From the IMG/VR virus record IMGVR_UViG_3300027985_000918, positions 62,001 to 126,000 of that record: a stretch of DNA of 64,000 bases. One strand, given 5' to 3'. How positions within the stretch are numbered: the stretch's first letter is position 1; each line of letters opens with the position of its first letter. Both the position numbers and the translations under genes were made by a program. This document shows positions 29,747 through 47,555 of this stretch, piece by piece. Under the pieces are notes generated by a model. It ran no database searches and was not told the origin of the DNA. It was given only the letters and a program-made list of their open reading frames with translations.

Positions 29747-29749
29747 TTC

Positions 29750-31104: not shown

Positions 31105-32124
31105 ATGATCTCGATCGAAACTCTTAAGAACCTGAAGGCTTGCTCGAATCAGGTGGCCCTTTTTGAGTCTTTTCTTGAGGGCCGGGGAGAGATCGAACCC
31201 ACACATGAGGTGATCCGGAAGGCAGCCTTGTACGGGTTGGACGTCCGGTGGGCCAAAGAGCGGGGTCTGATCAAATTCCCCGATGGGCAGATCGAATTCA
31301 AACACGGCACCCGGGAGTGGTGGCTCAACGGGAAGCGGCACCGTGAGGACGGGCCTGCGATCGAGGGGGCCGACGGCAGCCGGGAGTGGTTCCTCCACGG
31401 GAAGCGGCACCGAGTTGATGGGCCTGCAGTCAAGTATTCTGACGGAAGCCAGTCGTGGTGTCTCGAAGGGAAGCTCCACAGAGAGGATGGGCCGGCTTTC
31501 GAGGGGGCCAACGGCCGCAAAGAGTGGTTCCTCCACGGGAAGCTCCACAGAGAGGATGGGCCTGCGATCGAGGGGGCCAACGGTACCAAAGCGTGGTGGA
31601 TCCACGGGAAGCAGCACCGAGAGGATGGTCCTGCGATCGAGCGGGCCGACGGCCGCAAAGAGTGGTGGCTCCACGGTCGGAGGCACCGTGAGGATGGACC
31701 TGCTGTCGAGTGGGTCAACGGCCACAAAGAGTGGTTTCTCCACGGCCAGCGTCACCGAGAGGATGGGCCGGCGATCGAGGGGGCCCACGACCACCGGGAG
31801 TGGTACCTCAGCGGGAACCTCCACCGGGAGGATGGGCCGGCTGTCGAGGAGGTCAACGGCCACAAAGAGTGGTTTCTCCACGGCCAGCGACACAGGGAGG
31901 ACGGGCCTGCTGTCGAGGGGGCCTACGGCTCCCGAGAGTGGTTTCTCAACGACCGACGGCACCGAGAGGATGGACCTGCTGTCGAGTGGGCCGACGGCTG
32001 GAAGGAGTGGTGGATCCACGGGAAGCTCCACAGGGAGGATGGTCCGGCGGTCGAGAGGTCCGGCGGCTCCCGGGAGTGGTGGATCGAAGGACAGTACATC
32101 CGAACTGAGGAGGGATCCAAGTGA
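31105..32124 (+). CDS. HREDGPA-repeat protein 10 (11 repeats)
   Basis: N-domain + repeats. Confidence 0.9.
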   Translation: MISIETLKNLKACSNQVALFESFLEGRGEIEPTHEVIRKAALYGLDVRWAKERGLIKFPDGQIEFKHGTREWWLNGKRHREDGPAIEGADGSREWFLHGKRHRVDGPAVKYSDGSQSWCLEGKLHREDGPAFEGANGRKEWFLHGKLHREDGPAIEGANGTKAWWIHGKQHREDGPAIERADGRKEWWLHGRRHREDGPAVEWVNGHKEWFLHGQRHREDGPAIEGAHDHREWYLSGNLHREDGPAVEEVNGHKEWFLHGQRHREDGPAVEGAYGSREWFLNDRRHREDGPAVEWADGWKEWWIHGKLHREDGPAVERSGGSREWWIEGQYIRTEEGSK

Positions 32125-33422
32125 TTACTGTACAGACCTTGAGGGATCTCGACGCATGCTCCAATCAGGTCATCCTCTTTCAGGAGTTCCTCGGAGATCG
32201 AGAGGGTGTTGAGCCCACGGCTGAGGTAGTTCGAGAGGCAGCCTTGTACGGGCTGAATGTCAAGTGGGCTCAAGCCCAAGGGTTGTTGCAGATCCCCGAT
32301 GGGCTGTTGGTCTACAAGAACGGCATTCGGGAGTGGTGCCTCAACGGAGAGCTCCACCGAGAGGATGGGCCTGCTTTCGAGTGGTCCGACGATATCAAGG
32401 AGTGGTGGTTCCACGGCCAGCTCCACCGTGAGGATGGCCCGGCCGTCGAGCAAGATGATGGGGGCAAGGAATGGTACATCCACGGGGTGCGGCACCGTGT
32501 GGGTGGTCCGGCGGTTGAGACGGCCTCTGGGCGTAAGGAGTGGCGAATCCACGGCCAGCTCCATCGAGAGGATGGGCCCGCTTACGAGTCTCTCCGACCA
32601 GGGCTTAAGATGTGGTACTCCCACGACATTCTCCACCGAGAAGATGGCCCGGCAGTTGAGCTGGCTAGCGGTTCCAAGGAGTGGTACCTCAACGGGAAGC
32701 TCCACCGAGAGGATGGGCCAGCGATCGAGCGGGCCAACGGTCGTCGAGAATGGTGGCTCCACGGCCTGAGGCACCGAAAGGATGGTCCTGCTTTCGAGGG
32801 GGCCGACGGAACCCGGGAGTGGCGGATCAATGGGAAGGCCCATCGGGAGGATGGTCCTGCGATCGAGGGGGACGACGGCATCCGGTCTTGGTGGGTCCAC
32901 GGACAGCGACACAGGGAGGACGGGCCTGCTGTCGAGAGGCCCGACGGCTGGAAGGAGTGGTGGATCCACGGGAAGCTCCACAGGGAGGATGGTCCAGCGG
33001 TCGAGAGGTCCGGCGGCTGGAAGGAGTGGTTCCTCAACGGGAAACGGCACAGGGAGGATGGTCCGGCTGTCGAGAGGTCCGACGGCTCCCGGGAGTGGTA
33101 CCTCAACGGTCAGCTCCACAGGGAGGATGGCCCCGCTGTCGAGTACGCCGAAGGTTCCCGAATTTGGTGTCTTAACGGGCAGCTCCACCGGGAGGATGGT
33201 CCCGCTGTCGAGTGGGCCTGCGGCCGCAAGGCGTGGTGGATCAACGGTCAGCGGCACCGAAAGGATGGGCCTGCTGTCGAGTGGGCCAACGGCTCCAAGG
33301 CGTGGTGGCTCAACGGTCAGCGGCACCGAAAGGATGGGCCTGCTGTTGAGCGGGCCGACGGCCGCAAAGAGTGGTGGACCCACGGCCAGTACCTCCGAAC
33401 TGAGGAAGGGAATCTTCAATGA
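32121..33422 (+). CDS. HREDGPA-repeat protein 11 (15 repeats)
   Basis: Longest member, GTG start. Confidence 0.9.
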   Translation: MITVQTLRDLDACSNQVILFQEFLGDREGVEPTAEVVREAALYGLNVKWAQAQGLLQIPDGLLVYKNGIREWCLNGELHREDGPAFEWSDDIKEWWFHGQLHREDGPAVEQDDGGKEWYIHGVRHRVGGPAVETASGRKEWRIHGQLHREDGPAYESLRPGLKMWYSHDILHREDGPAVELASGSKEWYLNGKLHREDGPAIERANGRREWWLHGLRHRKDGPAFEGADGTREWRINGKAHREDGPAIEGDDGIRSWWVHGQRHREDGPAVERPDGWKEWWIHGKLHREDGPAVERSGGWKEWFLNGKRHREDGPAVERSDGSREWYLNGQLHREDGPAVEYAEGSRIWCLNGQLHREDGPAVEWACGRKAWWINGQRHRKDGPAVEWANGSKAWWLNGQRHRKDGPAVERADGRKEWWTHGQYLRTEEGNLQ

Positions 33423-34441
33423 TCACTCTAGATACTCTAGAGAATCTGAGGGCTTGCTTGAACCAGGTCACCCTTTTCCGAAAGTTCCTGGGAGATCGAG
33501 AGGGTGTTGAGCCCACGCTGGAGGTGATCCGGGAAGCAGCCCTGTACGGGTTGGATGTTGAGTGGGCCAAAAGCAAGGGGTTGCTCACGATCCCGGACGG
33601 GATGGTCTTCTACAGGGGCGGCACAAAGAGGTGGTACCTCAACGGCCTGAGGCACCGGGAGGATGGTCCGGCTGTCGAGGGGGCCAACGGCTCCAAGGAA
33701 TGGTGGGTCAACGGCCAGCGGCACAGGGAGGACGGGCCGGCTTTCGAGGGGGCTGACGGTTCCCGGGAATGGTGGGTCCACGACCTCAGGCACAGGGAAG
33801 GGGGGCCTGCGATCGAGTGGGCTGACGGGTCCAAAGAGTGGTACCTCAACGGCCAGCTCCACCGAGAGGATGGGCCTGCTTTCGAGTGGGCCGACGGCTG
33901 GAGGGAGTGGTGGGTCCACGGCCAGCGACACAGGGAGGATGGGCCTGCTTATGAGTGGCCCAACGGCTCCAAGGAATGGTGGCTCCACGGTCTGAGGCAC
34001 CGTGAGGATGGATCTGCTTTCGAGGGGGCCGACGGTGCCAAGGAGTGGTACCGCCACGGTCTGTGCCACCGAGAGGATGGTCCTGCTATTGAGCGGGCCA
34101 ACGGCTCTCGGGAGTGGAACATCCACGGCCTGAGACACCGAGAGGATGGGCCCGCTGTCGAGGGGGCCGATGGCACCCGGTCTTGGTGGGTCAACGGAAA
34201 GCTCCACAGGGAGGATGGGCCGGCGATCGAGAGGGCCGACGGTACTCGGTCGTGGTGGGTCCACGGCCTGAGGCACCGAGAGGATGGGCCTGCTGTCGAG
34301 GGGGCCAACGGCTGGAAGGAGTGGTACATCCACGGCCAGCGGCACCGAAAGGATGGCCCGGCGATCGAGTACGCTGGGGGCACTCGGGAATGGTGGGTCA
34401 ACGGTCAGTACATCCGAACTGAGGAGGGGACCGGCCGATGA
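33419..34441 (+). CDS. HREDGPA-repeat protein 12 (11 repeats)
   Basis: N-domain + repeats. Confidence 0.9.
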   Translation: MITLDTLENLRACLNQVTLFRKFLGDREGVEPTLEVIREAALYGLDVEWAKSKGLLTIPDGMVFYRGGTKRWYLNGLRHREDGPAVEGANGSKEWWVNGQRHREDGPAFEGADGSREWWVHDLRHREGGPAIEWADGSKEWYLNGQLHREDGPAFEWADGWREWWVHGQRHREDGPAYEWPNGSKEWWLHGLRHREDGSAFEGADGAKEWYRHGLCHREDGPAIERANGSREWNIHGLRHREDGPAVEGADGTRSWWVNGKLHREDGPAIERADGTRSWWVHGLRHREDGPAVEGANGWKEWYIHGQRHRKDGPAIEYAGGTREWWVNGQYIRTEEGTGR

Positions 34442-35250
34442 TTACTGTGGATACCCTTCGGCACATGAAGGCTTGTTCGGACCAGATTACCCTTTTCGAG
34501 GAGTTCCCCGGAGGTCGAGAGGGTGTCGAGCCCACGGCTGAGGTAGTTCGAGAGGCAGCCTTGTACGGGCTGGATGTGAGGTGGGCCCAGTATCAGGGTC
34601 TGATCACGATCCCGGACGGGATGATTATCTTCAAGGACGGTTCCAAGGAGTGGTACCTCAACGGTCTGAGACACCGAGAGGATGGGCCGGCTGTCGAGGG
34701 GGTCAACGGCCACAAAGAGTGGTTTCTCCACGGCCAGCGACACAGGGAGGACGGGCCTGCTTTCGAGGGGACTGACGGCAGTTCGGAGTGGTACTTCCAT
34801 GGCCTTCTCCACCGAGAGGACGGGCCCGCTATCGAGATGGCTGGCGGTACTTTGGAGTGGTACATCCACGGTCTGAGGCATCGAGAGGATGGACCTGCTA
34901 TCGAGCGGGATTCGGGATCCAAAGAGTGGTGGTTCAAAGGCTTTCGCCACCGAGACGGGGCCCCTGCTGTCGAAAATGTCGACGGAACCAAAGCGTGGTA
35001 CCTCAACGGCCAGCTCCACCACGTTGACGGCCCGGCTCTCTCGATCGCCGGCGGCCGCAAGGAGTGGTACATCCACGGCCTACCTCATCGAAAGGATGGG
35101 CCCGCAATTGAATGGCCCGATGGAACTCGGGAGTGGCGGATCCGAGGCCTTCTTCACCGAGATGATGGACCTGCGGTCGAGTACACCGACGGCACCAAAG
35201 AGTGGTGGGACCACGGGCAGCGCACCCGAATCGAGAGGAAACCCCAATGA
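34438..35250 (+). CDS. HREDGPA-repeat protein 13 (8 repeats)
   Basis: N-domain + repeats. Confidence 0.9.
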   Translation: MITVDTLRHMKACSDQITLFEEFPGGREGVEPTAEVVREAALYGLDVRWAQYQGLITIPDGMIIFKDGSKEWYLNGLRHREDGPAVEGVNGHKEWFLHGQRHREDGPAFEGTDGSSEWYFHGLLHREDGPAIEMAGGTLEWYIHGLRHREDGPAIERDSGSKEWWFKGFRHRDGAPAVENVDGTKAWYLNGQLHHVDGPALSIAGGRKEWYIHGLPHRKDGPAIEWPDGTREWRIRGLLHRDDGPAVEYTDGTKEWWDHGQRTRIERKPQ

Positions 35251-35927
35251 TCACAGTAAACACCCTTAAGGACCTGAGGGCTTGCTCGGACCAGGTGGAA
35301 CTCTTCGAGTCTTTCCTCGGGGAGAGGGAAGAAGTCGAACCCACGCCCGACGTGGTGAGGGCAGCAGCCCTGTACGGGTTGGACATTTGGTGGGCCCAAT
35401 ACCAGGGTTTGCTTAAGATCCCCGACGGGGTGATCGTCTACAAGGACGTCTTCAAGAAGTGGTGGTACCTCAACGGGAAGCGGCACCGTGAGGATGGGCC
35501 GGCGGGCGAGTGGGCCGACGGCCGCAAAGAGTGGTGGATCCACGGGAAGCTCCACCGTGAGGGTGGGCCTGCTATCGAGGGGGCAGGCGGCCACAAGGAG
35601 TGGTGGATCAACGGGAAGTGTCATCGGGAGGATGGCCCCGCAGTCGAGTGGGCCAACGGTACCAAAGCGTGGTGGATCCATGACCAGCTCCATCGGGAGG
35701 ATGGGCCTGCGATCGAGGGGGGCGGCGGCTGGAGGGAGTGGTGGATCCACGGCCTGAGGCACCGAGAGGATGGGCCTGCTTTCGAGGGGTCCGACGGCCA
35801 CAAGGAGTGGTGGCTCAGGGGGAAACGCCACCGAGAGGATGGCCCCGCAGTCAAGTACGCTGGGGGCACTCGGGAATGGTGGGTCAACGGTCAGTACATC
35901 CGAACTGAGGAGGGGAACCCTCGATGA
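35247..35927 (+). CDS. HREDGPA-repeat protein 14 (6 repeats)
   Basis: ATG 35247. Confidence 0.9.
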   Translation: MITVNTLKDLRACSDQVELFESFLGEREEVEPTPDVVRAAALYGLDIWWAQYQGLLKIPDGVIVYKDVFKKWWYLNGKRHREDGPAGEWADGRKEWWIHGKLHREGGPAIEGAGGHKEWWINGKCHREDGPAVEWANGTKAWWIHDQLHREDGPAIEGGGGWREWWIHGLRHREDGPAFEGSDGHKEWWLRGKRHREDGPAVKYAGGTREWWVNGQYIRTEEGNPR

Positions 35928-36532
35928 TCACTGTACAGACCTTGATGAACCTCGATGCCTGCCCGGATCAGGTAGCTCTTTTCCAGGAGTTTTTGGGGGA
36001 TCGAGAGGGTGTCGAGCCCACGGATGAGGTGATTCGGGAGGCAGCCTTGTACGGGCTGGCTGTGGTGTGGGCCCAGTCCCACGGCCTGCTGCGGATTCCA
36101 GACGGCATCCTCGTGTACAGGAACGGCCAAAAGGAGTGGTGGATCAACGGAAAGCTCCACCGAGAGGATGGCCCCGCAATCGAATGGGCCAGCGGTGTAC
36201 TAGAGTGGTGGATCCAGGGTCAGCGACACCGTGAGGATAGGCCTGCGATCGAGTGGCCTGACGGCTCCAAGGAGTGGTGGACCAACGATCAGGTTCACCG
36301 TGAGGATGGCCCCGCTGTCGAGTGGGCCTGCGGCCGCAAGGAGTGGTGGATCAACGGAAAGCCCCACCGAGAGGATGGCCCGGCGATCGAGAGGACCAAC
36401 GGCTCCCGAGAGTGGTGGCTCCACGGCCAACGGCACCGAGAGGATGGGCCGGCGGTTGAGCGGGCCAACGGCCGCAAAGAGTGGTGGATCCACGGGGTTT
36501 GTACCCGAATCGAGGAAGGGACAGTCCAATGA
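35924..36532 (+). CDS. HREDGPA-repeat protein 15 (5 repeats)
   Basis: N-domain + repeats. Confidence 0.9.
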   Translation: MITVQTLMNLDACPDQVALFQEFLGDREGVEPTDEVIREAALYGLAVVWAQSHGLLRIPDGILVYRNGQKEWWINGKLHREDGPAIEWASGVLEWWIQGQRHREDRPAIEWPDGSKEWWTNDQVHREDGPAVEWACGRKEWWINGKPHREDGPAIERTNGSREWWLHGQRHREDGPAVERANGRKEWWIHGVCTRIEEGTVQ

Positions 36533-37341
36533 TCACCGTACAGACCTTGAAAACCCTCAATGCCTGCCCATGTCAGGTAACCCTTTTCGAGTCTTTTCTT
36601 GGTGACCGAGAAGGGATCGAGCCCACGGCTGAGGTGATTCGGGAAGCAGCCCTGTCCGGCCTAGATGTGAGGTGGGCCCAGTATCAGGGTCTGATCACGA
36701 TCCCGGACGGGATGATTATCTTCAAGGACGGCTCCCGAGAGTGGTGGCTCAACGGGAAGTTCCATCGGAAGGATGGCCCCGCTGTTGAGAGGTTCAACGG
36801 CTCCCGAGAGTGGTGGATCCAGGGGAAGCGGCACCGAGAGGATGGTCCTGCTTTTGAGGGGGCCGACGGCACCCGAGAGTGGTGGCTCAACGGTCAGAGA
36901 CACCGAAAAGAGGGGCCGGCTGTTGAAGGAACCGACGGCCACAAGGAATGGTGGACTCACGGCCATCTTCACCGTGAGGATGGGCCTGCTGTCGAGTGGG
37001 CCGACGGCCGTCGGGAATGGTGGATCCACGGGAAGTTCCATCGGGAGGATGGCCCCGCTCTTGAGAGGGCCGACGGTACCAAAGCGTGGTTCCTCCACGG
37101 AAAGCGTCACCGAGAGGATGGGCCTGCTGTCGAGGGGGCCAATGGCTGGAAGGAGTGGTACTTCCATGGACAGCGGCACCGTGGAGATGGTCCGGCGATC
37201 GAGTACGCTGGGGGCACTCGGGAGTGGTACCTCAACGGAAAGCTCCACAGAGAGGACGGGCCGGCGATCGAGCGGGCCAACGGCACCAAGGAATGGTGGA
37301 TCCACGGACAGTTCATACGATCTGAGGAGGAATCCAAGTGA
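36529..37341 (+). CDS. HREDGPA-repeat protein 16 (8 repeats)
   Basis: ATG 36529. Confidence 0.9.
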   Translation: MITVQTLKTLNACPCQVTLFESFLGDREGIEPTAEVIREAALSGLDVRWAQYQGLITIPDGMIIFKDGSREWWLNGKFHRKDGPAVERFNGSREWWIQGKRHREDGPAFEGADGTREWWLNGQRHRKEGPAVEGTDGHKEWWTHGHLHREDGPAVEWADGRREWWIHGKFHREDGPALERADGTKAWFLHGKRHREDGPAVEGANGWKEWYFHGQRHRGDGPAIEYAGGTREWYLNGKLHREDGPAIERANGTKEWWIHGQFIRSEEESK

Positions 37342-38429
37342 TCACTGTCAACACCCTTCGGAACCTGAAAGCATGTCGGAACCAGGTAGTTCTTTTCCAG
37401 GAGTTTTTGGGGAATCGAGAGGGTGTCGAGCCCACGGCTGAGGTAGTTCGAGAGGCAGCCTTGTACGGGTTGGACGTGAGGTGGGCCCAATACAGGGGTC
37501 TGCTCACGATCCCCGACGGGCTGCTCACATACAAAAACGGATCCAAGGAGTGGCGGCTCAACGGGCAGCTCCACCGAGAGGATGGGCCTGCGATCGAGTG
37601 GGCCGACGGCCGCAAGGAGTGGTACAGCAACGGGAAGCTCCACAGAGTTGATGGGCCTGCTGTCGAGGGGTCCAACGGCCCCACGGAGTGGTGGGTCCAC
37701 GGCCGGAGGCACCGAGAGGATGGGCCTGCTGTCGAGTACGCCGACGGCTCCACGGAGTGGTACTTCCAAGGACAGAGGCACCGTGAATGTGGGCCTGCTG
37801 TCGAGGGGTCCAACGGCCACAAGGAGTGGTGGATCAACGGGCAGAGGCACCGAGAGGATGGGCCGGCTATCGAGTGGACCGATGGATCCCGGGAGTGGTA
37901 CCTCAACGGGCAGAGGCATAGGGAGGAGGGGCCCGCTGTCGAAAGGGCCGACGGCTCCCGGGAATGGTGGGTTCACTACCAGCTTCATCGAGAAGCTGGG
38001 CCGGCTGTCGAACGGGACAACGGCCACAAGGAGTGGTGGCTCTACGGGCAGCTCCATCGGGAGGATGGGCCTGCTGTCGAGTGGGCCGACGGCTCCCGAG
38101 AGTGGTACCTCAATGGCCAGCTCCACCGGGACGATGGGCCCGCAGTTACGAAGCCCAATGGCACCAAGGAATGGTACCTCGATGGTCGTAGGCACCGAGA
38201 TGATGGCCCGGCGATCGAGTGGAGCACTGGCCGCCAATGGTGGTGGGTCAACGGGAAGCGGCACCGAGTGGATGGACCTGCGATCGAGTACGCTGGGGGC
38301 ACTCGGGAGTGGTACCTCCACGGTCAGCGGCACCGAAAGGATGGCCCCGCTGTTGAAGGGGCCGACGGCCGCAAAGAGTGGTGGACCCAGGGTCAGTACA
38401 TCCGAACTGAGGAGGGGACAGTCCAATGA
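37338..38429 (+). CDS. HREDGPA-repeat protein 17 (12 repeats)
   Basis: GTG start. Confidence 0.9.
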   Translation: MITVNTLRNLKACRNQVVLFQEFLGNREGVEPTAEVVREAALYGLDVRWAQYRGLLTIPDGLLTYKNGSKEWRLNGQLHREDGPAIEWADGRKEWYSNGKLHRVDGPAVEGSNGPTEWWVHGRRHREDGPAVEYADGSTEWYFQGQRHRECGPAVEGSNGHKEWWINGQRHREDGPAIEWTDGSREWYLNGQRHREEGPAVERADGSREWWVHYQLHREAGPAVERDNGHKEWWLYGQLHREDGPAVEWADGSREWYLNGQLHRDDGPAVTKPNGTKEWYLDGRRHRDDGPAIEWSTGRQWWWVNGKRHRVDGPAIEYAGGTREWYLHGQRHRKDGPAVEGADGRKEWWTQGQYIRTEEGTVQ

Positions 38430-39932: not shown

Positions 39933-39940
39933 CTCAACAG

Positions 39941-39983
39941 AAAAACCTTCGGCCTCTCGACAACGGGTGGGCCGAAGGTTTTT
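39941..39983 (+). terminator. hairpin terminator within array
   Basis: AAAAACCTTCGGCC-loop-GGCCGAAGGTTTTT. Confidence 0.75.
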
Positions 39984-40050
39984 GTTGTTGGGGGGGCCGA
40001 GGGTAGCTAAGAAGGGTAGGTTCAGGGACAGCAGCGGAGGAAATCAGGAG

Positions 40051-40508
40051 ATGATCACTATCCAGACTCTTCAGAGGTTGGGAGCTTGCTCCAATCAGGT
40101 GGACATGTTCCGGGAGTTTCTGGGAGGTCGAGAAGGCGTTGAGCCCACTCCGGAGGTGATCCGAGAAGCTGCCCTTTTTTCGGGCTGAGCATCCTGTGGG
40201 CCAAAGTCAAGGGGATTTTGGAATTCCCCGATGGGATGCTCGTCTACAAGGATGGCCGCCGTGTGTGGTATCTCAACGGCCAACTCCACCATGAGGATGG
40301 GCCTGCGATCAAGTGGCCAGACGGGACCCGGAAGTGGTATTTCAAGGGCCAACTTCATCGGAAGGGTGGTCCGGCAGTCGAATGGGCCAACGGCCGTAAG
40401 GAGTGGTTCTTCCACGGTCGTAGGCATCGAGAAGATGGGCCGGCTTACGAGGGACTCTACGGCCTCAATGTGTGGTACATCCACGGCCAGCGCATCCCTA
40501 CCTTCTGA
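40051..40508 (+). pseudogene. HREDGPA-repeat protein 20 (3 repeats), frameshift in T-run
   Basis: T6 at 40175-40180; T4 or T7 would restore frame; paralog of protein 8. Confidence 0.8.
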
Positions 40509-40520
40509 GAGGGCTTTTCC

Positions 40521-41126
40521 ATGATCACTATCCAGACCTTGCAGAAATTGGGAGCTTGTCTCAGCCAGGTGGACCTGTTCCAAGAGTTCCTTGGTGGTCG
40601 ACAGGGAGTCGAGCCTACTCCGGATGCGATCCGAACTGCCGCCCTGTACGGTTTGGCTATCGAGTGGGCTCAGTCTCACGGTCTGCTGCAGATCCCCGAC
40701 GGGATGCTCCTCTACAAGGACGGATCTAAGGCGTGGTATCTCGGGGGGAAGCTCCACCGGGGGGATGGCCCGGCTGTTGAGGGGGCCGATGGCCGTCGGG
40801 AATGGTGGATCCACGGGGTGAGGCACCGTGCAGATGGCCCTGCCATTGATGTGGTCAACGGCACCAAGGAGTGGTGGCTCAACGGCCAACTCCACCGAGA
40901 AGATGGTCCGGCAGTCGAATGGGGTAAAACCCACCGAGAGTGGTTCTTCCATGGACAGCGGCACCGGGAGGACGGTCCGGCTGTCGAGAGGTCCAACGGC
41001 TCCTGGGCATGGTACTTCGGTGGATTGCTCCACCGGGAGGACGGACCGGCAGTTGAGTGGCCCAGTGGCACTCGGGAGTGGTGGACCCATGGGGTCCGCA
41101 CCCGAATCGAGGAGGGCCCCAAGTGA
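40521..41126 (+). CDS. HREDGPA-repeat protein 21 (5 repeats)
   Basis: Paralog of protein 9. Confidence 0.9.
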   Translation: MITIQTLQKLGACLSQVDLFQEFLGGRQGVEPTPDAIRTAALYGLAIEWAQSHGLLQIPDGMLLYKDGSKAWYLGGKLHRGDGPAVEGADGRREWWIHGVRHRADGPAIDVVNGTKEWWLNGQLHREDGPAVEWGKTHREWFFHGQRHREDGPAVERSNGSWAWYFGGLLHREDGPAVEWPSGTREWWTHGVRTRIEEGPK

Positions 41127-41905
41127 TCACCGTACAGACATTGACCGGACTCGAAGCCTGCCACAACCAGGTGGCCCTTTTCCGGGAGTTTCTCGGGGGT
41201 CGTGAAGGGATCGAACCCACACCAGATGTTATTCGGGAGGCAGCCCTATACGGGCTGAATGTCAAGTGGGCGCAAGCCCAGGGGCTGTTGGAATTCCCCG
41301 ATGGGGTGCTCGTCTACAAGGGCGGCCGTAAGGAGTGGTACCTCGACGGTCAGCTCCATCGAGAGGGCGGGCCAGCGTTCGAGTGGTCCGACGATATCAA
41401 GGAGTGGTGGTTCCACGGCCGTCTCCACCGTGAGGATGGTCCTGCTGTCGAGCAGGAAGATGGGGGCAAGGAATGGTACATCCACGGGGTGCGGCACCGT
41501 GTGGGTGGTCCCGCCATCGAGACTGCCTATGGGCGTAAGGAGTGGAGGGTCAAGGGGCAGCTCCACCGTGAAGATGGGCCCGCTTATGAGTCTCCCTTAG
41601 TTAAGATGTGGTGCTTCCACGACCTGCTCCACCGAAAGGATGGCCCGGCAGTTGAGCTTCCTAACGGAACCGAGGAGTGGTACCTCAACGGGGAACGCCA
41701 CCGAGTTGGGGGTCCGGCGATCGAGTGGGCCGACGGCCGCAAGGAGTGGTGGTTCAACGGGGAACGCCACCGTGAAGACGGCCCCGCTGTTGAACGGTCT
41801 GACGGCACCAAGGAGTGGTGGACTCACGGGGTGAAGCATCCGGATCGGAAAGGAATTCCGATGATCACTACCCAGTCCCTTCGGATTGAGGAAGATTCCC
41901 AATGA
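41123..41905 (+). CDS. HREDGPA-repeat protein 22 (7 repeats), fused to collapsed minigene
   Basis: GTG 41123; tail contains second MITTQ start at 41861. Confidence 0.85.
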   Translation: MITVQTLTGLEACHNQVALFREFLGGREGIEPTPDVIREAALYGLNVKWAQAQGLLEFPDGVLVYKGGRKEWYLDGQLHREGGPAFEWSDDIKEWWFHGRLHREDGPAVEQEDGGKEWYIHGVRHRVGGPAIETAYGRKEWRVKGQLHREDGPAYESPLVKMWCFHDLLHRKDGPAVELPNGTEEWYLNGERHRVGGPAIEWADGRKEWWFNGERHREDGPAVERSDGTKEWWTHGVKHPDRKGIPMITTQSLRIEEDSQ

Positions 41906-42369
41906 TCACTACCCAGACTCTTCAAAACCTGGGGGCTTGCCGAGACCAGGTTATTCTCTTCCAAGAGTTCTTGAGAGATCGGGAGGGTGTCGAGCCCACG
42001 CCCGAGGTGGTCCGAGAGGCAGCCCTGTATGGGCTGGATGTTGAGTGGGCCTTGTACCATGACATTCTGCGGATCCCCGATGGGATGCTCGTCTACAAGG
42101 ACGGCCGCAAGGAGTGGTACCTCGACGGTCATCTCCACAGAGAGGATGGGCCAGCGGTCGTGACTGCCGTGGGCACCCGGGAGTGGTGGCTCCACGGCCG
42201 GTGGCATCGTGAGGGGGGGCCTGCTTACGAGGGGGCCTGCGGTCACAAAGAGTGGTGGTTCCACGGCCAGAGGCACCGTGAGGATGGTCCTGCGGTCGAG
42301 TGGGCCAACGGACACAAAGAGTGGTGGCTCGACGGGCAGCACACCCCAACCGAAGGAGCAGATCAATGA
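41902..42369 (+). CDS. HREDGPA-repeat protein 23 (3 repeats)
   Basis: N-domain + repeats. Confidence 0.9.
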   Translation: MITTQTLQNLGACRDQVILFQEFLRDREGVEPTPEVVREAALYGLDVEWALYHDILRIPDGMLVYKDGRKEWYLDGHLHREDGPAVVTAVGTREWWLHGRWHREGGPAYEGACGHKEWWFHGQRHREDGPAVEWANGHKEWWLDGQHTPTEGADQ

Positions 42370-43247
42370 TCACAATCCAAAATTTGAAGGACCTCAGGGC
42401 TTGCTCGGACCAGGTGGATCTCTTTGGGGAGTTTCTCGGGAGTCGAGAGGGGATCGAACCCACGCCCGATGCGGTGCGGGAAGCCGCCCTGTTTGGGCTG
42501 GACTTCGAGTGGGCCCAGTGCAAAGGTTTGCTCACGATCCCGGACGGGATGATCACGTACAAGGACGGCTCTCAGTTGTATTACCTCGACGGCTGTCTCC
42601 ACCGTGAAGACGGGGCTGCGGTCGAGTGGGCCGACGGCTCCCGAGAGTGGTGGGTCCAGGGCCAGGCCCACCGAGTGGGCGGGGCGGCTTTCGAGGGGGC
42701 CGACGGTCGTCGAGAATGGTGGGTCAACGGCCAGCGGCACCGTGAAGACGGGCCGGCTTTCGAGGAATCTGACGGCAGCTCGGAGTGGTACTTCCACGAC
42801 CATCTCCACCGAGAAGACGGGCCCGCTATCGAGATGTCCTCCGGCACCAAGGAGTGGTGGATCCACGGGGTGAGGCATCGTGAGGAGGGACCAGCGGTCG
42901 AGCGGAACTTGGGATCCAAAGAGTGGTGGGTCAAGGGCCTGCGCCACCGTGAAGGGGCCCCTGCTGTCGAAGGGGTCGACGGAACCAAAGCGTGGTATTC
43001 CTACGGTCAACTCCACCGAGTTGACGGCCCGGCGATCGAGAGAGCCGGAGGCCTCAAAGAATGGTTCATCCACGGTCTACATCACCGAGAAGACGGGCCC
43101 GCTATCGAAAGGCCCGATGGAACTTGGGAGTGGCGGATCCGAGGCCTTATCCACCGTGGTGATGGCCCTGCCATCAAACGGAAAGATGGAACCCAAGAGT
43201 GGTGGGTCCACGGGCAGCGCACCCAAATCGAGAGACCATGCCGATGA
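42366..43247 (+). CDS. HREDGPA-repeat protein 24 (9 repeats)
   Basis: ATG 42366. Confidence 0.9.
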   Translation: MITIQNLKDLRACSDQVDLFGEFLGSREGIEPTPDAVREAALFGLDFEWAQCKGLLTIPDGMITYKDGSQLYYLDGCLHREDGAAVEWADGSREWWVQGQAHRVGGAAFEGADGRREWWVNGQRHREDGPAFEESDGSSEWYFHDHLHREDGPAIEMSSGTKEWWIHGVRHREEGPAVERNLGSKEWWVKGLRHREGAPAVEGVDGTKAWYSYGQLHRVDGPAIERAGGLKEWFIHGLHHREDGPAIERPDGTWEWRIRGLIHRGDGPAIKRKDGTQEWWVHGQRTQIERPCR

Positions 43248-43918
43248 TCACTATCAGCACCTTGAAAGGCCTCAAGGCCTGCTCGGACCAGGTCACCCTT
43301 TTCCGGGAGTTCCTCGGAGATCGAGAGGGTGTCGAGCCCACGCCGGAGGTAGTTCGAGAGGCAGCCCTGTTTGGGCTGGATGTGAAGTGGGCCCAGTATC
43401 AGGGTCTGCTGCGGATTCCAGACGGGAAGATCACATACAAGGACGACTCCCGAGAGTGGTGGATCCACGGGAAGCTCCATCGGGAGGATGGGCCTGCGAT
43501 CGAAGGGTCCAACGGTTCCAAGGAGTGGTACCTCCAGGGGAAGTTCCATCGTGAGGACGGGCCGGCTTACGAGTGGGCCAACGGCTCCCGAGAGTGGTAT
43601 ATCCACGGCCTGAGGCACCGGGAGGATGGGCCGGCTGCCGAGTACGCCAACGGCACCAAAATGTGGTACCTCAACGGGAAGCTCCACCGAGAGGATGGCC
43701 CCGCTGTTGAAGGGGCCGACGGCTCCCGGTCGTGGTGGATCCACGGCCTGAGGCACAGGGAGGATGGGCCGGCGATCGAGTGGGATGACGGCTGGAAGGA
43801 GTGGTACTTCCAAGGACAGAGGCACCGTGAGGGGGGGCCTGCGATCGAGGGTCCCGACGGCTTCCGGGAGTGGTGGAGCCACGGGCAGCTCATCCCCATT
43901 AAGGAGGAACCCAAATGA
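43244..43918 (+). CDS. HREDGPA-repeat protein 25 (6 repeats)
   Basis: ATG 43244. Confidence 0.9.
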   Translation: MITISTLKGLKACSDQVTLFREFLGDREGVEPTPEVVREAALFGLDVKWAQYQGLLRIPDGKITYKDDSREWWIHGKLHREDGPAIEGSNGSKEWYLQGKFHREDGPAYEWANGSREWYIHGLRHREDGPAAEYANGTKMWYLNGKLHREDGPAVEGADGSRSWWIHGLRHREDGPAIEWDDGWKEWYFQGQRHREGGPAIEGPDGFREWWSHGQLIPIKEEPK

Positions 43919-44382
43919 TCACTGTCCAGACCTTGGTTGATTTGGAAGCCTGCTCGGACCAGGTCACTCTTTTCCGGGAGTTCCTGGGAGATCGAGAGGG
44001 TGTTGAGCCCACGCCGGAGGTGATCCGTGAGGCAGCTTTGTACGGGTTGGACATTTGGTGGGCCCAACACATGGGCCTGCTCACGATCCCGGACGGGAAG
44101 ACCACGTACAAGGATGGCTCTCAGTCGTGGCACCTCGAAGGGAAGCTCCATCGGGAGGATGGCCCTGCGATCGAGTGGACCAATGGCACCCGGTCTTGGC
44201 GGATCAACGGCCTGAGGCACAGGGAAGGGGGGCCGGCAATCGAGTACGCCGACGGCAGCCGGGAATGGTGGCTCAACGGAAAGCACCACCGAGAGGATGG
44301 GCCGGCTTTCGAGGGGGCCGACGGCCACCGGGAGTGGTGGACCCACGGGGTTTGTACCCGAATTGAGAGGGGGGACGAATGA
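43915..44382 (+). CDS. HREDGPA-repeat protein 26 (3 repeats)
   Basis: N-domain + repeats. Confidence 0.9.
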   Translation: MITVQTLVDLEACSDQVTLFREFLGDREGVEPTPEVIREAALYGLDIWWAQHMGLLTIPDGKTTYKDGSQSWHLEGKLHREDGPAIEWTNGTRSWRINGLRHREGGPAIEYADGSREWWLNGKHHREDGPAFEGADGHREWWTHGVCTRIERGDE

Positions 44383-45329
44383 TCACTGTCAACACTTTGA
44401 TGAACCTCGATGCCTGTCCTGAACAAACCACCCTTTTCCTAGAGTTCCTCAGGGATCGAGAGGGTGTTGAGCCCACGCCGGAGGTGATCCGTGAGGCAGC
44501 CTTGTACGGGCTGAACGTTGGGTGGGCTCAACTCAAGGGGTTGCTCACGATCCCGGACGGTCTGCTGGTGTGCAAAGACGGCATTCGGGAGTGGTACCTC
44601 GAAGGGAAGCTCCATCGGGAGGACGGGCCTGCTGTCGAGCGGGACGACGGCCGCAAAGAGTGGTACCTCCACGGGAAGCCCCACCGAGAGGATGGGCCTG
44701 CTTTCGAGGGGGCCGACGGCTCCCGAATTTGGTGTCTTAACGGGGAGGTCTCCAGGGAAGATGGGCCTGCGATCGAGCGGGCCGACGGCTCCACGGAGTG
44801 GTACCTCAACGGGAAGCGGCACCGTGAGGACGGGCCGGCGTTCGAGTGGGCCAACGGCTCCAAAGCGTGGTGGCTCAACGGTCAGCGGCACCGAAAGGAT
44901 GGGCCTGCTGTTGAGCGGGCCGGTGGTACCCGGGAGTGGTGGATCCACGGGGTGAGACATCGTGAGGAGGGACCAGCGGTCGAGCGGAATTCGGGATCCA
45001 AGGAGTGGTGGGTCAAGGGCCTTCTCCACCGTGAGGGGGCCCCTGCTGTCGAAGGGGCCAACGGAACCAAAATGTGGTATTCCTACGGCGTTCTCCACCG
45101 AGAGGATGGGCCGGCAGTCGAGATTGCCGGGGGCCGCAAAGAATGGTTCATCCACGGTCTACCTCACCGAGAGTCTGGGCCAGCAATCGAATGGCCCAAT
45201 GGAACTTGGGAGTGGCGGATCCGAGGCCTCCTCCACCGTGATGATGGACCTGCTGTCAAACGGGAGGATGGAACCCAAGAGTGGTGGGCCCACGGTCAGC
45301 GTACCCGAATTGAGAGGCCCTGCCGATGA
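44379..45329 (+). CDS. HREDGPA-repeat protein 27 (10 repeats)
   Basis: N-domain + repeats. Confidence 0.9.
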   Translation: MITVNTLMNLDACPEQTTLFLEFLRDREGVEPTPEVIREAALYGLNVGWAQLKGLLTIPDGLLVCKDGIREWYLEGKLHREDGPAVERDDGRKEWYLHGKPHREDGPAFEGADGSRIWCLNGEVSREDGPAIERADGSTEWYLNGKRHREDGPAFEWANGSKAWWLNGQRHRKDGPAVERAGGTREWWIHGVRHREEGPAVERNSGSKEWWVKGLLHREGAPAVEGANGTKMWYSYGVLHREDGPAVEIAGGRKEWFIHGLPHRESGPAIEWPNGTWEWRIRGLLHRDDGPAVKREDGTQEWWAHGQRTRIERPCR

Positions 45330-46069
45330 TCACGATCGAAACTCTCCGGAACCGGGGGGCTTGCCAGAGTCAGGTGACCCTTTTTGAGTCCTTTCTTGGA
45401 GGTCGGGAGGGGGTCGAACCCACACCTGAGGTGATCCGAGAGGCAGCCTTGTTTGGGCTGAACGTCCGGTGGGCCAAGGAGCAGGGTCTGCTCACGATCC
45501 CCGATGGGCAGATCGAATTCAAGGATGGTCACAAGGAGTGGTATCTCCACGGCCTGAAGCACCGAGAGAACGGGCCAGCAGTCGAGTGGGGCTGCGGCAC
45601 CAAGGGGTGGTATTCCCACGGCCAGCGGCACCGTGAAGACGGTCCTGCTATCGAGATGGCCGACGGGTCCAAGGCGTGGTGGATTCACGGGAAAGCCCAC
45701 CGAGAGGATGGGCCTGCGATCGAGTGGAATGACGGGTCCAAAGAGTGGTGGATCAATGGTCAGCCCCACCGAGAGTCGGAGCCGGCGATCGAGTATGCCG
45801 ACGGCACTCGGGAGTGGTGGACCAACGGCCAGCTCCACCGAGAGGATGGGCCGGCGATCGAGAGGAGCGACGGCACCAAGGAGTGGTACTTCCAAAGTCA
45901 GCTCCACCGAGATGGCGGGCCAGCGGTCGAAACGGCTTACGGACGTAAGGAGTGGTACCGCAATGGGGAACTCCACCGTGAAGACGGACCTGCTTACGAG
46001 TCCCCCACTGGTTACAGGGTGTGGTGGGTAAACGGGCGCTGGATCCGGGCCGAGAGGAGAAGCAAATGA
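45326..46069 (+). CDS. HREDGPA-repeat protein 28 (7 repeats)
   Basis: N-domain close to protein 5. Confidence 0.9.
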   Translation: MITIETLRNRGACQSQVTLFESFLGGREGVEPTPEVIREAALFGLNVRWAKEQGLLTIPDGQIEFKDGHKEWYLHGLKHRENGPAVEWGCGTKGWYSHGQRHREDGPAIEMADGSKAWWIHGKAHREDGPAIEWNDGSKEWWINGQPHRESEPAIEYADGTREWWTNGQLHREDGPAIERSDGTKEWYFQSQLHRDGGPAVETAYGRKEWYRNGELHREDGPAYESPTGYRVWWVNGRWIRAERRSK

Positions 46070-46812
46070 TCACGGTAGGGATTCTGAAAAACCTGGAGGA
46101 TTGCCCCGATCAGCTCTCTCTCTTTCGGAAGTTCCTTGGAGGCCGGAAGGGGGTCGAACCCACACCTGAGGTGATCCGAGAGGCAGCCCTGTTTGGGCTG
46201 GATGTGAAGTGGGCCCAGTATCAGGGTCTGCTCACGATCCCGGACGGGAAGATCACGTACAAAGACAGCCACAAGGAGTGGTATCTCAACGGGAAGTTCC
46301 ATCGGGAGGATGGGCCTGCTTACGAGGGGGCCGATGGATCCCGGGAGTGGTGGCTCAACGGGCAGCTCCACCGAGAGGATGGGCCTGCTGTCGAGGGGGC
46401 CGATGGCACCCGGTCTTGGTGGATCAACGGCCAGAGGCACCGAGAGGACGGGCCGGCTATTGAGGTGGCAGACGGCCATCGAGAGTGGTGGGCCAATAAT
46501 CAGCTCCACCGGGAAGACGGGCCGGCAATCGAGGGTCTTTTTGGTTTTCAGCATTGGTATCACCACGGTTATCTTCACCGAGAAGAAGGGCCGGCGGTTG
46601 TGGGCACCGAGGGATCCAAGGCGTGGTGGTCTTACGGCTTACTCCACCGAGCGGGGGGGCCTGCGATCGAGGGAGCCGACGGCACCAAGGAGTGGTACAG
46701 CCACGGTTTGTGCCACCGTGAGGACGGGCCGGCTATCGAGCGGGCCAACGGCATCAAGGAATGGTGGACCCACGGAGTCCGCACCCGAACTGAGGAGGGG
46801 AACCCTCAATGA
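46066..46812 (+). CDS. HREDGPA-repeat protein 29 (7 repeats)
   Basis: ATG 46066. Confidence 0.9.
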   Translation: MITVGILKNLEDCPDQLSLFRKFLGGRKGVEPTPEVIREAALFGLDVKWAQYQGLLTIPDGKITYKDSHKEWYLNGKFHREDGPAYEGADGSREWWLNGQLHREDGPAVEGADGTRSWWINGQRHREDGPAIEVADGHREWWANNQLHREDGPAIEGLFGFQHWYHHGYLHREEGPAVVGTEGSKAWWSYGLLHRAGGPAIEGADGTKEWYSHGLCHREDGPAIERANGIKEWWTHGVRTRTEEGNPQ

Positions 46813-47555
46813 TCACTGTCAACACTTTGGTGGCTCGCAAGGCATGCTCGGATCAGGTCACACTCTTTCAGAAGTTCCTGGGAGATCGAGAGGGGGTTGA
46901 TCCCACACCCGACGTGGTGAGGGAAGCAGCCCTGCTTGGGTTGGATGTCGAGTGGGCCCAATACAGGGGTCTGCTCACGATCCCCGACGGGATGATTATC
47001 TATAGGGACGGCACAAAGAGGTGGTGGCTCAACGGGAAGCGGCACCGAGAGGATGGGCCTGCTGTCGAGTGGGCTGACGGCTCTCGGGAATGGTGGGTTC
47101 ACTACCAGCTTCATCGAGAAGCTGGGCCGGCTGTCGAGCGGGCCGACGGCCGCAAGGAGTGGTACCTCCACGGGAAGCTCCACCGTGGAGATGGTCCGGC
47201 TATCGAGGGGGCCGACGGTCGGAGGGAATGGTGGATCAACGGCCAGTACCACAGGGAGGATGAGCCTGCTGTCGAGTGGGCCGGCGGAACCCGAGAGTGG
47301 TGGCTCCACGGCCTTCTCCACCGAGAGGATGGGCCGGCGATCGAGTACGCCAACGGCACCAAAATGTGGTACCTCAACGGGAAGCTCCACCGAGAGGATG
47401 GGCCTGCTGTCGAGTACGCCGACGGAACCCAGGAGTGGTACCTCAACGGGAAGCTCCACCGTGGAGATGGTCCGGCTATCGAGGGGGCCGACGGCTCTCG
47501 GGAGTGGTGGACCCACGGACAGTTCATACGATCTGAGGAGGGGAACCCTCAATGA
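46809..47555 (+). CDS. HREDGPA-repeat protein 30 (7 repeats)
   Basis: N-domain + repeats. Confidence 0.9.
   Translation: MITVNTLVARKACSDQVTLFQKFLGDREGVDPTPDVVREAALLGLDVEWAQYRGLLTIPDGMIIYRDGTKRWWLNGKRHREDGPAVEWADGSREWWVHYQLHREAGPAVERADGRKEWYLHGKLHRGDGPAIEGADGRREWWINGQYHREDEPAVEWAGGTREWWLHGLLHREDGPAIEYANGTKMWYLNGKLHREDGPAVEYADGTQEWYLNGKLHRGDGPAIEGADGSREWWTHGQFIRSEEGNPQ

What the first reader, a model, noticed from the sequence alone, without database searches (positions are those of the whole stretch)
31984..47555. Repeat modules shuffled between non-adjacent paralogs
Seen: genes 13, 24 and 27 share a distinctive 4-5-repeat C-terminal block (GSKEWW.KG...WRIRGL.HR.DG...QRT.IER) behind different front halves. 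Gene 27's front shares TCCCGAATTTGGTGTCTTAACGGG and an ~80-nt stretch with gene 11's end (about 33.16/33.28 kb vs 44.72/44.84 kb). Genes 11 and 22 share the WSDDIKEW...VRHRVGG block; WWVHYQLHREAG occurs in 17 and 30; ~75 nt near 31.99 kb recurs near 32.94 kb. Inference: ongoing in-register recombination/gene conversion generates new repeat combinations, a combinatorial diversification mechanism needing no RT.
Basis: partly seen in the sequence, partly recalled or inferred. Interest (0 to 1): 0.65.

Follow-up and report, generated by a model that had tools for sequence, protein, structure and literature searches.

The report
Mosaic MORN-repeat gene array in megaphage
A 402-kb bacteriophage genome carries 31 tandem copies of one repeat-protein gene, and the copies have exchanged short stretches of DNA; this is the usual way multigene families evolve, here unusually large for a phage, and nothing shows a dedicated diversification device.

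Summary
Window 24948-48417 is a same-strand array of 31 paralogs. It lies in a 402,383-bp IMG/VR phage record that has terminal repeats, rIIA/rIIB and its own RecA-like gene.

Each gene has three parts:
- a 66-aa helical head with no Pfam family;
- 3-15 repeats of 23 aa (69 nt) that fold as MORN-type beta-hairpins;
- a short tail whose codons hold the next gene's ribosome-binding site.

Paralogs differ by about 33% at the nucleotide level (dS about 1). Even so, 49 tract pairs of at least 45 nt are at least 95% identical. Single units reach 96-99% identity while their neighbours sit at background.

A PHI test, a GENECONV-like test and tree comparisons (AU p about 0.001-0.002) reject duplication plus point mutation alone. 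Assembly chimeras are unlikely, because the longest exact repeat is 82 nt.

Recombination, meaning patch gene conversion and unequal crossover, is therefore supported. No reverse transcriptase is present.

Two parts of the interpretation are not shown. "Ongoing" is untested, because no raw reads or related strains were available. A dedicated combinatorial mechanism is also not shown: selection is mostly purifying (dN/dS 0.13-0.43), at least five copies are broken, and all intact copies are full genes rather than silent cassettes.

Verdict: a birth-and-death multigene family, a new member of a known kind.

The parts
24948..48417 (+). Whole tandem array: 31 paralogous genes (g1-g31) plus a headless 5-unit ORF at the end. 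It is about 23.5 kb, or 5.8% of the phage genome.
   Evidence: N-domain HMM hits, unit table, genome search
32121..33422 (+). g11, the longest copy (433 aa, 15 full units). It shares units 2-5 with g22, unit 10 with g10 unit 11 (99%) and unit 15 with g27 unit 5 (99%).
34438..35250 (+). g13. Its N domain is itself a mosaic: nt 62-135 match g11 (96%), 78-152 match g17 (97%) and 136-203 match g16 (100%). Unit 2 matches g10 unit 9 (96%). The C block is shared with g24 and g27.
42366..43247 (+). g24. Units 5-10 are colinear with g27 units 6-11. Unit 4 matches g13 unit 3 (90%).
44379..45329 (+). g27, a chimera. Its N domain is nearest g26, units 3-5 resemble the end of g11, and units 6-11 resemble g24.
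34912..35250 (+). C-terminal shared block, g13 copy (units 5-9 plus the tail ending ..TRIER..)
42840..43247 (+). C-terminal shared block, g24 copy
   Evidence: g24/g27: 86% nt, dS 0.36
44922..45329 (+). C-terminal shared block, g27 copy
33277..33357 (+). 81-nt tract, 98.8% identical to 44842-44922 in g27. Flanking units are 75% and 46% alike.
44842..44922 (+). Partner of the g11 tract, in g27 unit 5
31975..32068 (+). 94-nt tract in g10 unit 11, 96.8% identical to 32925-33018 in g11 unit 10
32925..33018 (+). Partner of the g10 tract, in g11
37950..38037 (+). 88-nt tract in g17 unit 7, 94.3% identical to 47076-47163 in g30 unit 2
47076..47163 (+). Partner of the g17 tract, in g30
32388..32666 (+). 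g11 units 2-5, colinear with g22 units 2-5 (41390-41662) at 90/93/83/81%
41390..41662 (+). g22 units 2-5, partner of g11 units 2-5
34573..34640 (+). 68 nt, 100% identical to 36664-36731 (g13 vs g16, across the head/unit-1 junction). The rest of the aligned region is 68% alike.
36664..36731 (+). Partner of the g13 tract, in g16
28612..30827 (+). Segmental duplication, copy A (end of g6, g7, g8, g9)
   Evidence: 2.2 kb, 82.6% overall; g7/g19 96%
38797..41018 (+). Segmental duplication, copy B (end of g18, g19, g20, g21)
25622..26220 (+). g2, disrupted by a frameshift inside the N domain
40051..40520 (+). g20, disrupted by a frameshift inside the N domain; its repeats continue in another frame
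47552..48417 (+). g31, stopped after 2 units (47929). A degenerate stretch and a headless 5-unit ORF follow.
41801..41905 (+). g22 tail holding a deletion scar: the first codons of an N domain (MITTQ..) are fused to a tail end

Best explanation
The region is a tandem multigene family in a bacteriophage of about 400 kb from a hydrothermal-vent metagenome.

There are 31 translationally coupled genes. Each encodes a small four-helix head domain of unknown function followed by a variable number of 23-residue MORN-type beta-hairpin repeats. Such repeats most likely form an elongated protein-binding surface (inferred).

The family grew by tandem and segmental duplication. It has since been reshaped by homologous recombination between misaligned copies:
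- unequal crossovers changed unit number and made chimeric genes;
- short patches of about 50-220 nt were copied between paralogs, whether neighbouring or distant (gene conversion);
- some copies decayed (birth and death).

The 69-nt periodicity, with the nearly invariant ..HREDGPA.. codons, keeps every exchange in frame and in unit register. That is a by-product of homology, not a special device. The phage's own RecA/UvsX-like recombinase is a plausible agent (inferred).

Shown: the anatomy, the fold, the mosaic pattern, its statistical support, the broken copies and the absence of a reverse transcriptase.
Inferred: the enzyme, the timing, and any benefit from the variety of proteins produced.
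For: Anatomy:
- Constant gene plan and 69-nt unit spacing.
- ATGA stop/start overlaps, and a GGAGG ribosome-binding site inside the tail codons of the upstream gene.

Phage identity:
- 402,383-bp virus record with terminal repeats.
- rIIA/rIIB homologs.
- RecA-like gene, E 3e-47.

Fold:
- AlphaFold2 pLDDT 94.9.
- Best Foldseek matches are MORN1 and junctophilin, E 1.5e-7, probability 1.0.

Mosaicism:
- 49 tract pairs of >=45 nt at >=95% identity, against a background of 67%.
- Near-identical single units with flanks at background.
- PHI p=0.0015.
- GENECONV-like test: best pair Bonferroni 4e-5, and 7 pairs beyond the 5% global permutation threshold.
- Region-specific control: the g13-g16 tract is 100% identical, against a 69% median and an 88% 99th percentile for all pairs in the same region.
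- {g13,g24,g27} form a 100/100 clade for the C end, while the N-domain clades are rejected there, AU p 0.001-0.002.
- Ages differ within one gene pair: g11/g22 dS is 1.02 in the head and 0.47 in units 1-4.

Birth and death:
- A 2.2-kb segmental duplication.
- Disrupted copies g1, g2, g18, g20 and g31, and an upstream relic.
- A deletion scar in the g22 tail.

Coding constraint:
- dN/dS 0.13-0.43.
- Scaffold codons show 75 nonsynonymous vs 281 synonymous differences; variable positions show 453 vs 113.

Arrays of the same repeat in other viral contigs show the same patchy identity.
Against: - No direct view of recombination in a population. Only contig-level data from the source sample could be laid, and no related genome was found.
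- The N-domain data alone do not reject a {g13,g24,g27} clade (AU p=0.147), so that one tree conflict is significant in one direction only.
- The column-shuffling tests ignore clustering of conserved sites and codon structure. They may be somewhat anti-conservative, although the region-specific control argues against that.
- The function of the proteins is unknown, and no expression data were available.
- The long-range order of the array rests on one metagenome assembly that I could not check with raw or long reads.
Confidence: 0.75

Rival explanations
1. A dedicated, adaptive combinatorial diversification system. On this view, frequent in-register exchange between paralogs continuously produces new repeat combinations on ecological time scales. 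It would be analogous to cassette-based antigenic variation or to the assembly of lamprey VLR receptors, and would give the phage a changing repertoire of binders.
For: - Exchanges join units at different ordinal positions (17 of 24 tracts) and occur between distant genes (mean distance 8.2 genes vs 10.7 for random pairs).
- Several tracts are 100% identical over 55-82 nt, so some events are recent.
- Variable repeat positions change at about the neutral rate or slightly faster (453 nonsynonymous vs 113 synonymous codon differences).
- The phage has its own RecA-like recombinase.
- No reverse transcriptase is present.
Against: - Background dS of about 1 between paralogs means exchange is rare relative to mutation.
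- Tracts of >=95% identity cover only 22% of the array, including a segmental duplication.
- Overall dN/dS is 0.13-0.43.
- Broken copies are tolerated.
- All intact copies are complete genes with their own start codon and ribosome-binding site, with no donor/acceptor asymmetry.
- No variants or alternative joints appear in the contigs of the source sample.
- No specialised site, nuclease or recombinase gene lies next to the array.
Confidence: 0.1
2. The mosaics came from recombination between co-infecting, related phage genomes carrying diverged arrays (exchange between genomes), not from gene conversion within one genome.
For: Large phages with RecA/UvsX-type recombinases recombine freely on co-infection (established for T4-like phages; my own knowledge). 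The patterns do not reveal where the donor was.
Against: For almost every young tract the matching partner lies in the same array, which is what intragenomic exchange predicts. No related genome could be found to serve as donor.
Confidence: 0.08
3. The chimeric genes are artefacts of short-read metagenome assembly across a repetitive region.
For: - The array is highly repetitive.
- It comes from a single metagenome assembly.
- Contigs of the same sample in other collections are fragmented, and some are chimeric at mate-pair (loxP) adapters.
Against: - The longest exact repeat in the array is 82 nt, and none reaches 91 nt. That is shorter than usual reads and the largest assembly k-mers.
- Logan contigs of 200-760 nt match piecewise with zero differences at even depth of about 30-37x.
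- All junctions keep the reading frame, and 26 genes are intact, which random misjoins would not give.
- The same contig is on record for two JGI samples.
Confidence: 0.04
4. Duplication and point mutation only. The highly similar tracts would reflect local differences in selective constraint or chance.
For: The repeat scaffold is strongly constrained, which raises background identity. N-domain data alone do not reject the {g13,g24,g27} clade.
Against: - The tracts are identical at synonymous sites too (dS 0.06-0.08, against about 1 for background).
- They sit at different positions in different gene pairs.
- Region-matched controls place them far outside all other pairs.
- The PHI, GENECONV-like and AU tests are all significant.
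Confidence: 0.03

Closest known systems
Multigene families of repeat-domain proteins (MORN, ankyrin, F-box and others) in giant viruses of amoebae
   Same: Both are large viral genomes carrying clustered paralogs of short-repeat proteins, MORN repeats of 23 aa among them, expanded by duplication and recombination (PMC5753266; PMC6418002 for pandoraviruses). Other viral contigs found here carry arrays of the same repeat.
   Different: The host genome here is a bacteriophage: rIIA/rIIB, Shine-Dalgarno sites, ATGA overlaps and a RecA-like gene. The head domain is different and rare, with 53 representatives among 1.84 billion proteins. I found no paper describing such an array in a phage.
MORN repeat proteins (MORN1, junctophilins, radial-spoke proteins) and the bacterial MORN_2/YwqK variant
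   Same: The period is 23 residues, the architecture is a beta-hairpin repeat, and the best structural matches are MORN1 and junctophilin. Some database relatives are named YwqK-type antitoxin by their source.
   Different: The window's proteins have no Pfam MORN or MORN_2 hit; MORN_2 hits to relatives fall below the cut-off. The consensus (..G.KEWW.NG..HREDGPA.E..) is its own variant, and it matches only about 20 positions of DUF6745. TM-scores are modest (0.37-0.41) because elongated repeat arrays bend differently.
Gene-conversion antigenic variation systems (Neisseria pilE/pilS, Borrelia vlsE, trypanosome VSG)
   Same: Short segments are copied between homologous, diverged copies, which gives mosaic genes without a reverse transcriptase.
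   Different: Those systems have one expressed locus and silent, truncated donor cassettes with one-way transfer. Here every intact copy is a complete gene with its own start codon and ribosome-binding site in one co-directional series. No rate or direction could be measured.
Diversity-generating retroelements of phages
   Same: Both are a phage-borne means of varying a binding protein.
   Different: No reverse transcriptase is present in the whole 402-kb record. There is no pairing of a template repeat with a variable repeat. Variation is spread over 31 paralogs.
Arrays of immunity genes in polymorphic-toxin loci
   Same: Both involve tandem paralogous small proteins. Elsewhere the head domain is fused to an Imm5-like immunity domain (PF21805) in place of the repeats. 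The MORN_2/YwqK type is annotated as an antitoxin.
   Different: No toxin gene was seen beside the array. The link rests on two fusion proteins and on an annotation, so it is a lead only.

Membership tests
MORN repeat proteins (Pfam MORN PF02493 / MORN_2 PF07661) | Repeat period of 23 residues in tandem | tested here: met
   Units start every 69 nt throughout all genes
MORN repeat proteins (Pfam MORN PF02493 / MORN_2 PF07661) | Beta-hairpin repeat fold like solved MORN structures | tested here: met
   AlphaFold2 pLDDT 94.9 with two short strands per unit. Foldseek top hits are 6t68, 6t69 and 9uo9, E 1.5e-7 to 2e-6, probability 1.0, TM 0.33-0.41
MORN repeat proteins (Pfam MORN PF02493 / MORN_2 PF07661) | Match to the Pfam profile above its gathering score | tested here: not met
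   The window's proteins have no MORN hit at E<=0.01. MORN_2 hits to relatives score 13-17 bits against a cut-off of 29.6
DUF6745 (PF20530) | Match over the 206-position profile above 27 bits | tested here: not met
   Only profile positions 62-83 match, at 16.9 bits. Hits in relatives cover the same roughly 20 positions
Diversity-generating retroelement | A reverse transcriptase gene in the element or genome | tested here: not met
   PF00078 has no match in the 402-kb record, while the control genomes do match
Cassette-type gene-conversion antigenic variation | One expression locus plus silent, truncated donor copies | tested here: not met
   26 copies are complete ORFs with an ATG/GTG start, an upstream GGAGG and a full head domain
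Cassette-type gene-conversion antigenic variation | High-frequency, one-way transfer seen within a population | not testable with these tools
   Only contigs of the source sample were available, and they show no variants
Tandem multigene family evolving by birth-and-death with gene conversion | Tandem paralogs with segmental duplications and pseudogenes | tested here: met
   31 copies, a 2.2-kb four-gene duplication, and disrupted copies and relics
Tandem multigene family evolving by birth-and-death with gene conversion | Mosaic similarity: segments of one gene have different nearest relatives, with statistical support | tested here: met
Immunity-gene arrays of polymorphic toxin systems | Adjacent toxin gene, or a recognised immunity domain in the proteins | tested here: not met
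   No toxin domain was found in the flanking genes tested. The window's proteins hold no Imm family; only distant head-domain relatives carry an Imm5-like domain

The most novel reading that the evidence does not exclude
The array may be a phage-encoded repertoire of modular binders that share a common head domain, perhaps an adaptor. Elsewhere that head is fused to immunity-type domains. On this reading each paralog neutralises or recruits a different host or competitor protein. In-register exchange of MORN units would then be selected for because it renews the repertoire. That would be a reverse-transcriptase-free counterpart in phages of VLR-like or var-like combinatorial diversification.
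Probability: 0.1. Interest if true: 0.8.

Novelty: new member of a known kind. Interest (0 to 1): 0.42.

Why it matters
Very large phages are mostly known from metagenomes, and much of their extra DNA is unexplained. Here about 6% of a 402-kb genome is one expanded family of repeat proteins, evolving as the repeat-protein families of eukaryotic giant viruses do. This suggests that genome growth by expansion of binder families is shared across large viruses.

The family has a head domain that no database describes and a repeat variant that occurs in thousands of unannotated proteins. Learning what these proteins bind would annotate a large block of viral dark matter.

The recombination itself is ordinary biology. 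It would become important only if it were shown to be fast and selected.

Tried and rejected
- Gapped self-BLAST with an identity filter hid the blocks, because long low-identity alignments swallowed them. A pure-Python diagonal scan timed out. Ungapped BLAST with a high mismatch penalty replaced both.
- Pfam, PHROG and NCBIfam gave no family for the proteins.
- The head domain gave no solved-fold match (best Z 4.1) and only weak ESM Atlas leads.
- Searches for the head domain in viral contigs found only this genome, and in JGI metagenome contigs found nothing.
- Two apparent relatives in ENA (P0122, P0123) turned out to be contigs of the same sample. They are chimeric at loxP mate-pair adapters, and one is the lone copy at genome 55974. 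They are not independent strains.
- Laying Logan contigs showed presence and identity only. The two odd joints in its table 5c are probably other paralogs; I traced one to g31 and did not trace the other. Neither is evidence of a population variant.
- The AU test of {g13,g24,g27} on the N domain alone was not significant (p=0.147).
- The sigma-70 promoter and terminator scan found nothing above chance inside the array.
- The N-terminal heads of the arrays in L002 and L013 recalled an F-box to me, but Pfam did not confirm it, so I make no such claim.
- No complex prediction was run, because no binding partner is proposed.


Full report
WHAT IS THERE

The window is positions 62001-126000 of a 402,383-bp IMG/VR virus record with direct terminal repeats. 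G+C is about 61%. The source appears to be a hydrothermal-vent metagenome.

Several features mark it as a bacteriophage:
- rIIA and rIIB homologs at window 798-4450;
- a sigma-70/ECF-like protein at 23015-24199 on the minus strand;
- a RecA/UvsX-like gene elsewhere in the genome, at 378132-378902, E 3e-47;
- Shine-Dalgarno sites and ATGA stop/start overlaps between genes.

From 24948 to 48417 the plus strand carries 31 paralogous genes in series. One further copy lies outside the window at genome position 55947.

Every gene has the same plan:
- A 66-residue head, 75% mean column identity among copies.
- Then 3 to 15 full units of 23 residues (69 nt), with consensus D-G-x-K-E-W-W-x-N/H-G-x-x-H-R-E-D-G-P-A-x-E-x-A.
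- Then a half unit and a short tail.
- The tail codons contain GGAGG 8-14 nt before the next start codon, so the genes look translationally coupled.

WHAT THE PROTEINS ARE

No Pfam, PHROG or NCBIfam family reaches threshold. Only about 20 positions of DUF6745 and the MORN_2 variant give weak hits.

An AlphaFold2 model of g25 built on an alignment of 23 paralogs is confident (pLDDT 94.9, pTM 0.82). It shows four helices in the head and then two short strands per unit. Foldseek against the PDB puts MORN1 of Trypanosoma, Toxoplasma and Plasmodium first, with junctophilins and radial-spoke MORN proteins (E 1.5e-7 to 1e-4, probability about 1, TM 0.3-0.4). The repeats are therefore MORN-type beta-hairpins. 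By Pfam's own threshold, however, the proteins are not members of the Pfam MORN families.

The repeat variant is very common. More than 7,700 proteins matched at E<=0.001, with many different N termini.

The head is rare. A profile search found 53 representatives among 1.84 billion proteins at E<=0.001. It has no solved-fold match (best Z 4.1). Elsewhere it sits in front of the same kind of repeats, in front of other repeats, or in front of an Imm5-like immunity domain. One such relative lies in phage-like contigs as a single or few-copy gene. The function is unknown; an elongated binding scaffold is the natural inference from the fold.

CHECKING THE OBSERVATION

All five items hold; details are in the observation check. 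In-phase units are on average 66.9% identical (sd 7.5%, 21,528 pairs), and N domains have a median of 69%. Against this background:
- g24 units 5-10 and g27 units 6-11 are 78-91% alike and colinear, and g13 units 5-9 join them at 78-86%.
- g11 unit 15 and g27 unit 5 are 99% alike.
- g10 unit 11 and g11 unit 10 are 99% alike.
- g17 unit 7 and g30 unit 2 are 96% alike.
- g11 and g22 share units 2-5 at 81-93%.

IS IT RECOMBINATION?

Six lines of evidence say yes.

1. Near-identical single units are flanked by units at background identity. For g11.15/g27.5 the neighbours are 75% and 46% alike. For g10.11/g11.10 they are 68% and 39% alike.

2. In the gap-free alignment of head plus first unit (28 genes), PHI gives p=0.0015. 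A GENECONV-like run test gives four pairs significant after Bonferroni correction. The best is g13-g16: 68 nt at 100% identity, against 68% in the rest (p 4e-5). Seven pairs lie beyond the 5% global permutation threshold. In the same 68-nt region all other pairs have a median of 69% and a 99th percentile of 88%, so local conservation does not explain the tract. The head of g13 is itself a patchwork of g11-like, g17-like and g16-like tracts.

3. The trees disagree.
   - For the last three units plus tail (270 nt, 24 genes), {g13,g24,g27} is a 100/100 clade.
   - The clades seen in the head tree are rejected there. These are g26+g27 (support 95/84), g13+g17 (support 77/87), and g14+g24+g30, which belong to the head-tree group g14+g24+g30+g31 (support 91/91). 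AU p is 0.001-0.002.
   - The reverse test is not significant (p=0.147), which I attribute to the 198-nt head holding little signal.

4. Ages differ within gene pairs.
   - Background dS is about 1.0-1.1.
   - The C block has dS 0.36-0.49.
   - The young tracts have dS 0.06-0.08.
   - g11/g22 has dS 1.02 in the head but 0.47 in units 1-4.

5. Larger events are visible:
   - a 2.2-kb duplication of four genes, 28612-30827 vs 38797-41018;
   - recent unit duplications inside g4, g10, g11 and g30;
   - a scar in the tail of g22, where the first codons of a head are fused to a tail end.

6. All 24 young tracts that lie in repeats keep the unit phase, and 17 of them join units at different ordinal positions. 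Partners are on average 8.2 genes apart, against 10.7 for random pairs, so distance matters little.

COULD IT BE AN ASSEMBLY ARTEFACT?

The longest exact repeat in the array is 82 nt, and none reaches 91 nt. Ordinary reads and large k-mers therefore resolve it.

Logan contigs of runs from the source sample cover 31900-37800 in pieces of 200-760 nt, with no differences, at even depth of about 30-37x. They cannot confirm long-range order.

ENA contigs that looked like relatives come from the same sample and are chimeric at loxP mate-pair adapters. I rate the artefact explanation at about 4%.

IS IT A DIVERSIFICATION MECHANISM?

The evidence does not reach that far.
- Paralogs are old (dS about 1).
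- Tracts of at least 95% identity cover 22% of the array, including the segmental duplication.
- dN/dS is 0.13-0.43 on all blocks tested.
- At least five copies are disrupted: g2 and g20 by frameshifts in the head, g18 by a frameshift before its last units, g31 by a stop after two units, and g1 by stops in its last unit. A relic also lies upstream of g1.
- There is no expression site with silent cassettes.
- No dedicated recombinase or nuclease was seen among the flanking genes tested.
- No population variants were seen.

Two points favour some adaptive value in variety. At the variable hairpin positions, codon differences between closest units are 453 nonsynonymous to 113 synonymous, which is about neutral or slightly above. 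The scaffold positions show 75 to 281 (a crude count).

Arrays of the same repeat behind other heads occur in other large viral contigs and show the same patchy identity. The behaviour therefore seems to be a general property of such arrays.

COMPARISON WITH WHAT IS KNOWN

The closest known kind is the clustered multigene families of repeat-domain proteins, MORN included, in giant viruses of amoebae (PMC5753266, PMC6418002). More broadly it resembles any tandem family evolving by birth and death with gene conversion.

It differs in three ways: it sits in a bacteriophage, its head domain is undescribed, and it is large (31 copies, 5.8% of the genome). I found no paper on such arrays in phages.

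It is not a DGR, because there is no RT. It is not a cassette-type antigenic variation system, because all copies are complete genes.

VERDICT

- Observation: confirmed.
- Recombination between paralogs: supported.
- 'Ongoing' and 'mechanism': not shown.
- Novelty: a new member of a known kind, of moderate interest. The interest lies mainly in the unannotated family and its scale in a phage.

The read-laying run used 5,901 letters.

Noticed in passing
window 798-4450 (+): Adjacent rIIA-like (818 aa) and rIIB-like (399 aa) genes, PHROG E 7e-78 and 2e-50. They mark the record as a T4-like-lineage large phage.
   Followed up: partly
window 17552-18343 (-): A protein with a Macro domain (PF01661, E 1e-19), which binds or hydrolyses ADP-ribose. 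It could be a counter-defence gene.
   Followed up: no
window 23015-24199 (-): A sigma-70/ECF-like protein with a C-terminal HTH (TIGR02937, E 1.7e-10). It is transcribed away from the start of the array.
   Followed up: no
window 27159-28382, 39640-40188, 40231-40524 (+): Long ORFs that read the repeats in a wrong frame, giving ..GSGGS..RMGL.. peptides. They are by-products of the 69-nt periodicity or of frameshifted copies, not separate genes.
   Followed up: yes
window, 45 nt before each gene start (e.g. 33374-33418): The conserved tail codons (..R-T-E-E-G..) of each gene spell GGAGG 8-14 nt before the next ATG. The protein tail and the next gene's ribosome-binding site are therefore the same DNA, and most stops overlap the next start as ATGA.
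   Followed up: yes
window 29210-29746 and 39396-39932; genome C1:55947-56393: An aberrant subfamily: g7, g19 and the lone copy outside the window. The head lacks the conserved Cys (..WVHS.QW..), and the repeats read H-C-E-D-G-P-A. About 190 nt of non-coding DNA precedes g7 and g19. g7 and g19 are 96% identical; the lone copy is 78% identical to them.
   Followed up: partly
window 41801-41905: The tail of g22 contains the first five codons of a head domain (MITTQ) joined directly to a tail end. This looks like the scar of a deleted gene.
   Followed up: partly
L003/L005/L007, L010, L002/L013: Other large viral contigs (GC 35-43%) carry tandem arrays of 10 to about 18 genes built from the same 23-aa ..HREDGPA.. 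repeat behind different, unidentified N-terminal heads. L010 has 44 near-identical tract pairs in 8 kb.
   Followed up: partly
L018, L023 (ENA contigs) and run X3: Contigs and loose ends contain loxP-like adapter sequence from a Cre-lox mate-pair library. This creates chimeric contigs and false protein C termini (..ITSYSIHYTKLY..) in public protein collections.
   Followed up: yes
genome C1:378132-378902 (-), outside the window: A RecA/UvsX-like recombinase gene (PF00154, E 3e-47), in an open frame of 441 aa.
   Followed up: no
P0125, P0148 (metagenome proteins): The head domain of the array proteins also occurs fused to an Imm5-like putative immunity domain (PF21805, E 7e-14 and 2e-10). This hints that the head is a shared module of immunity-type or counter-defence proteins.
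   Followed up: partly
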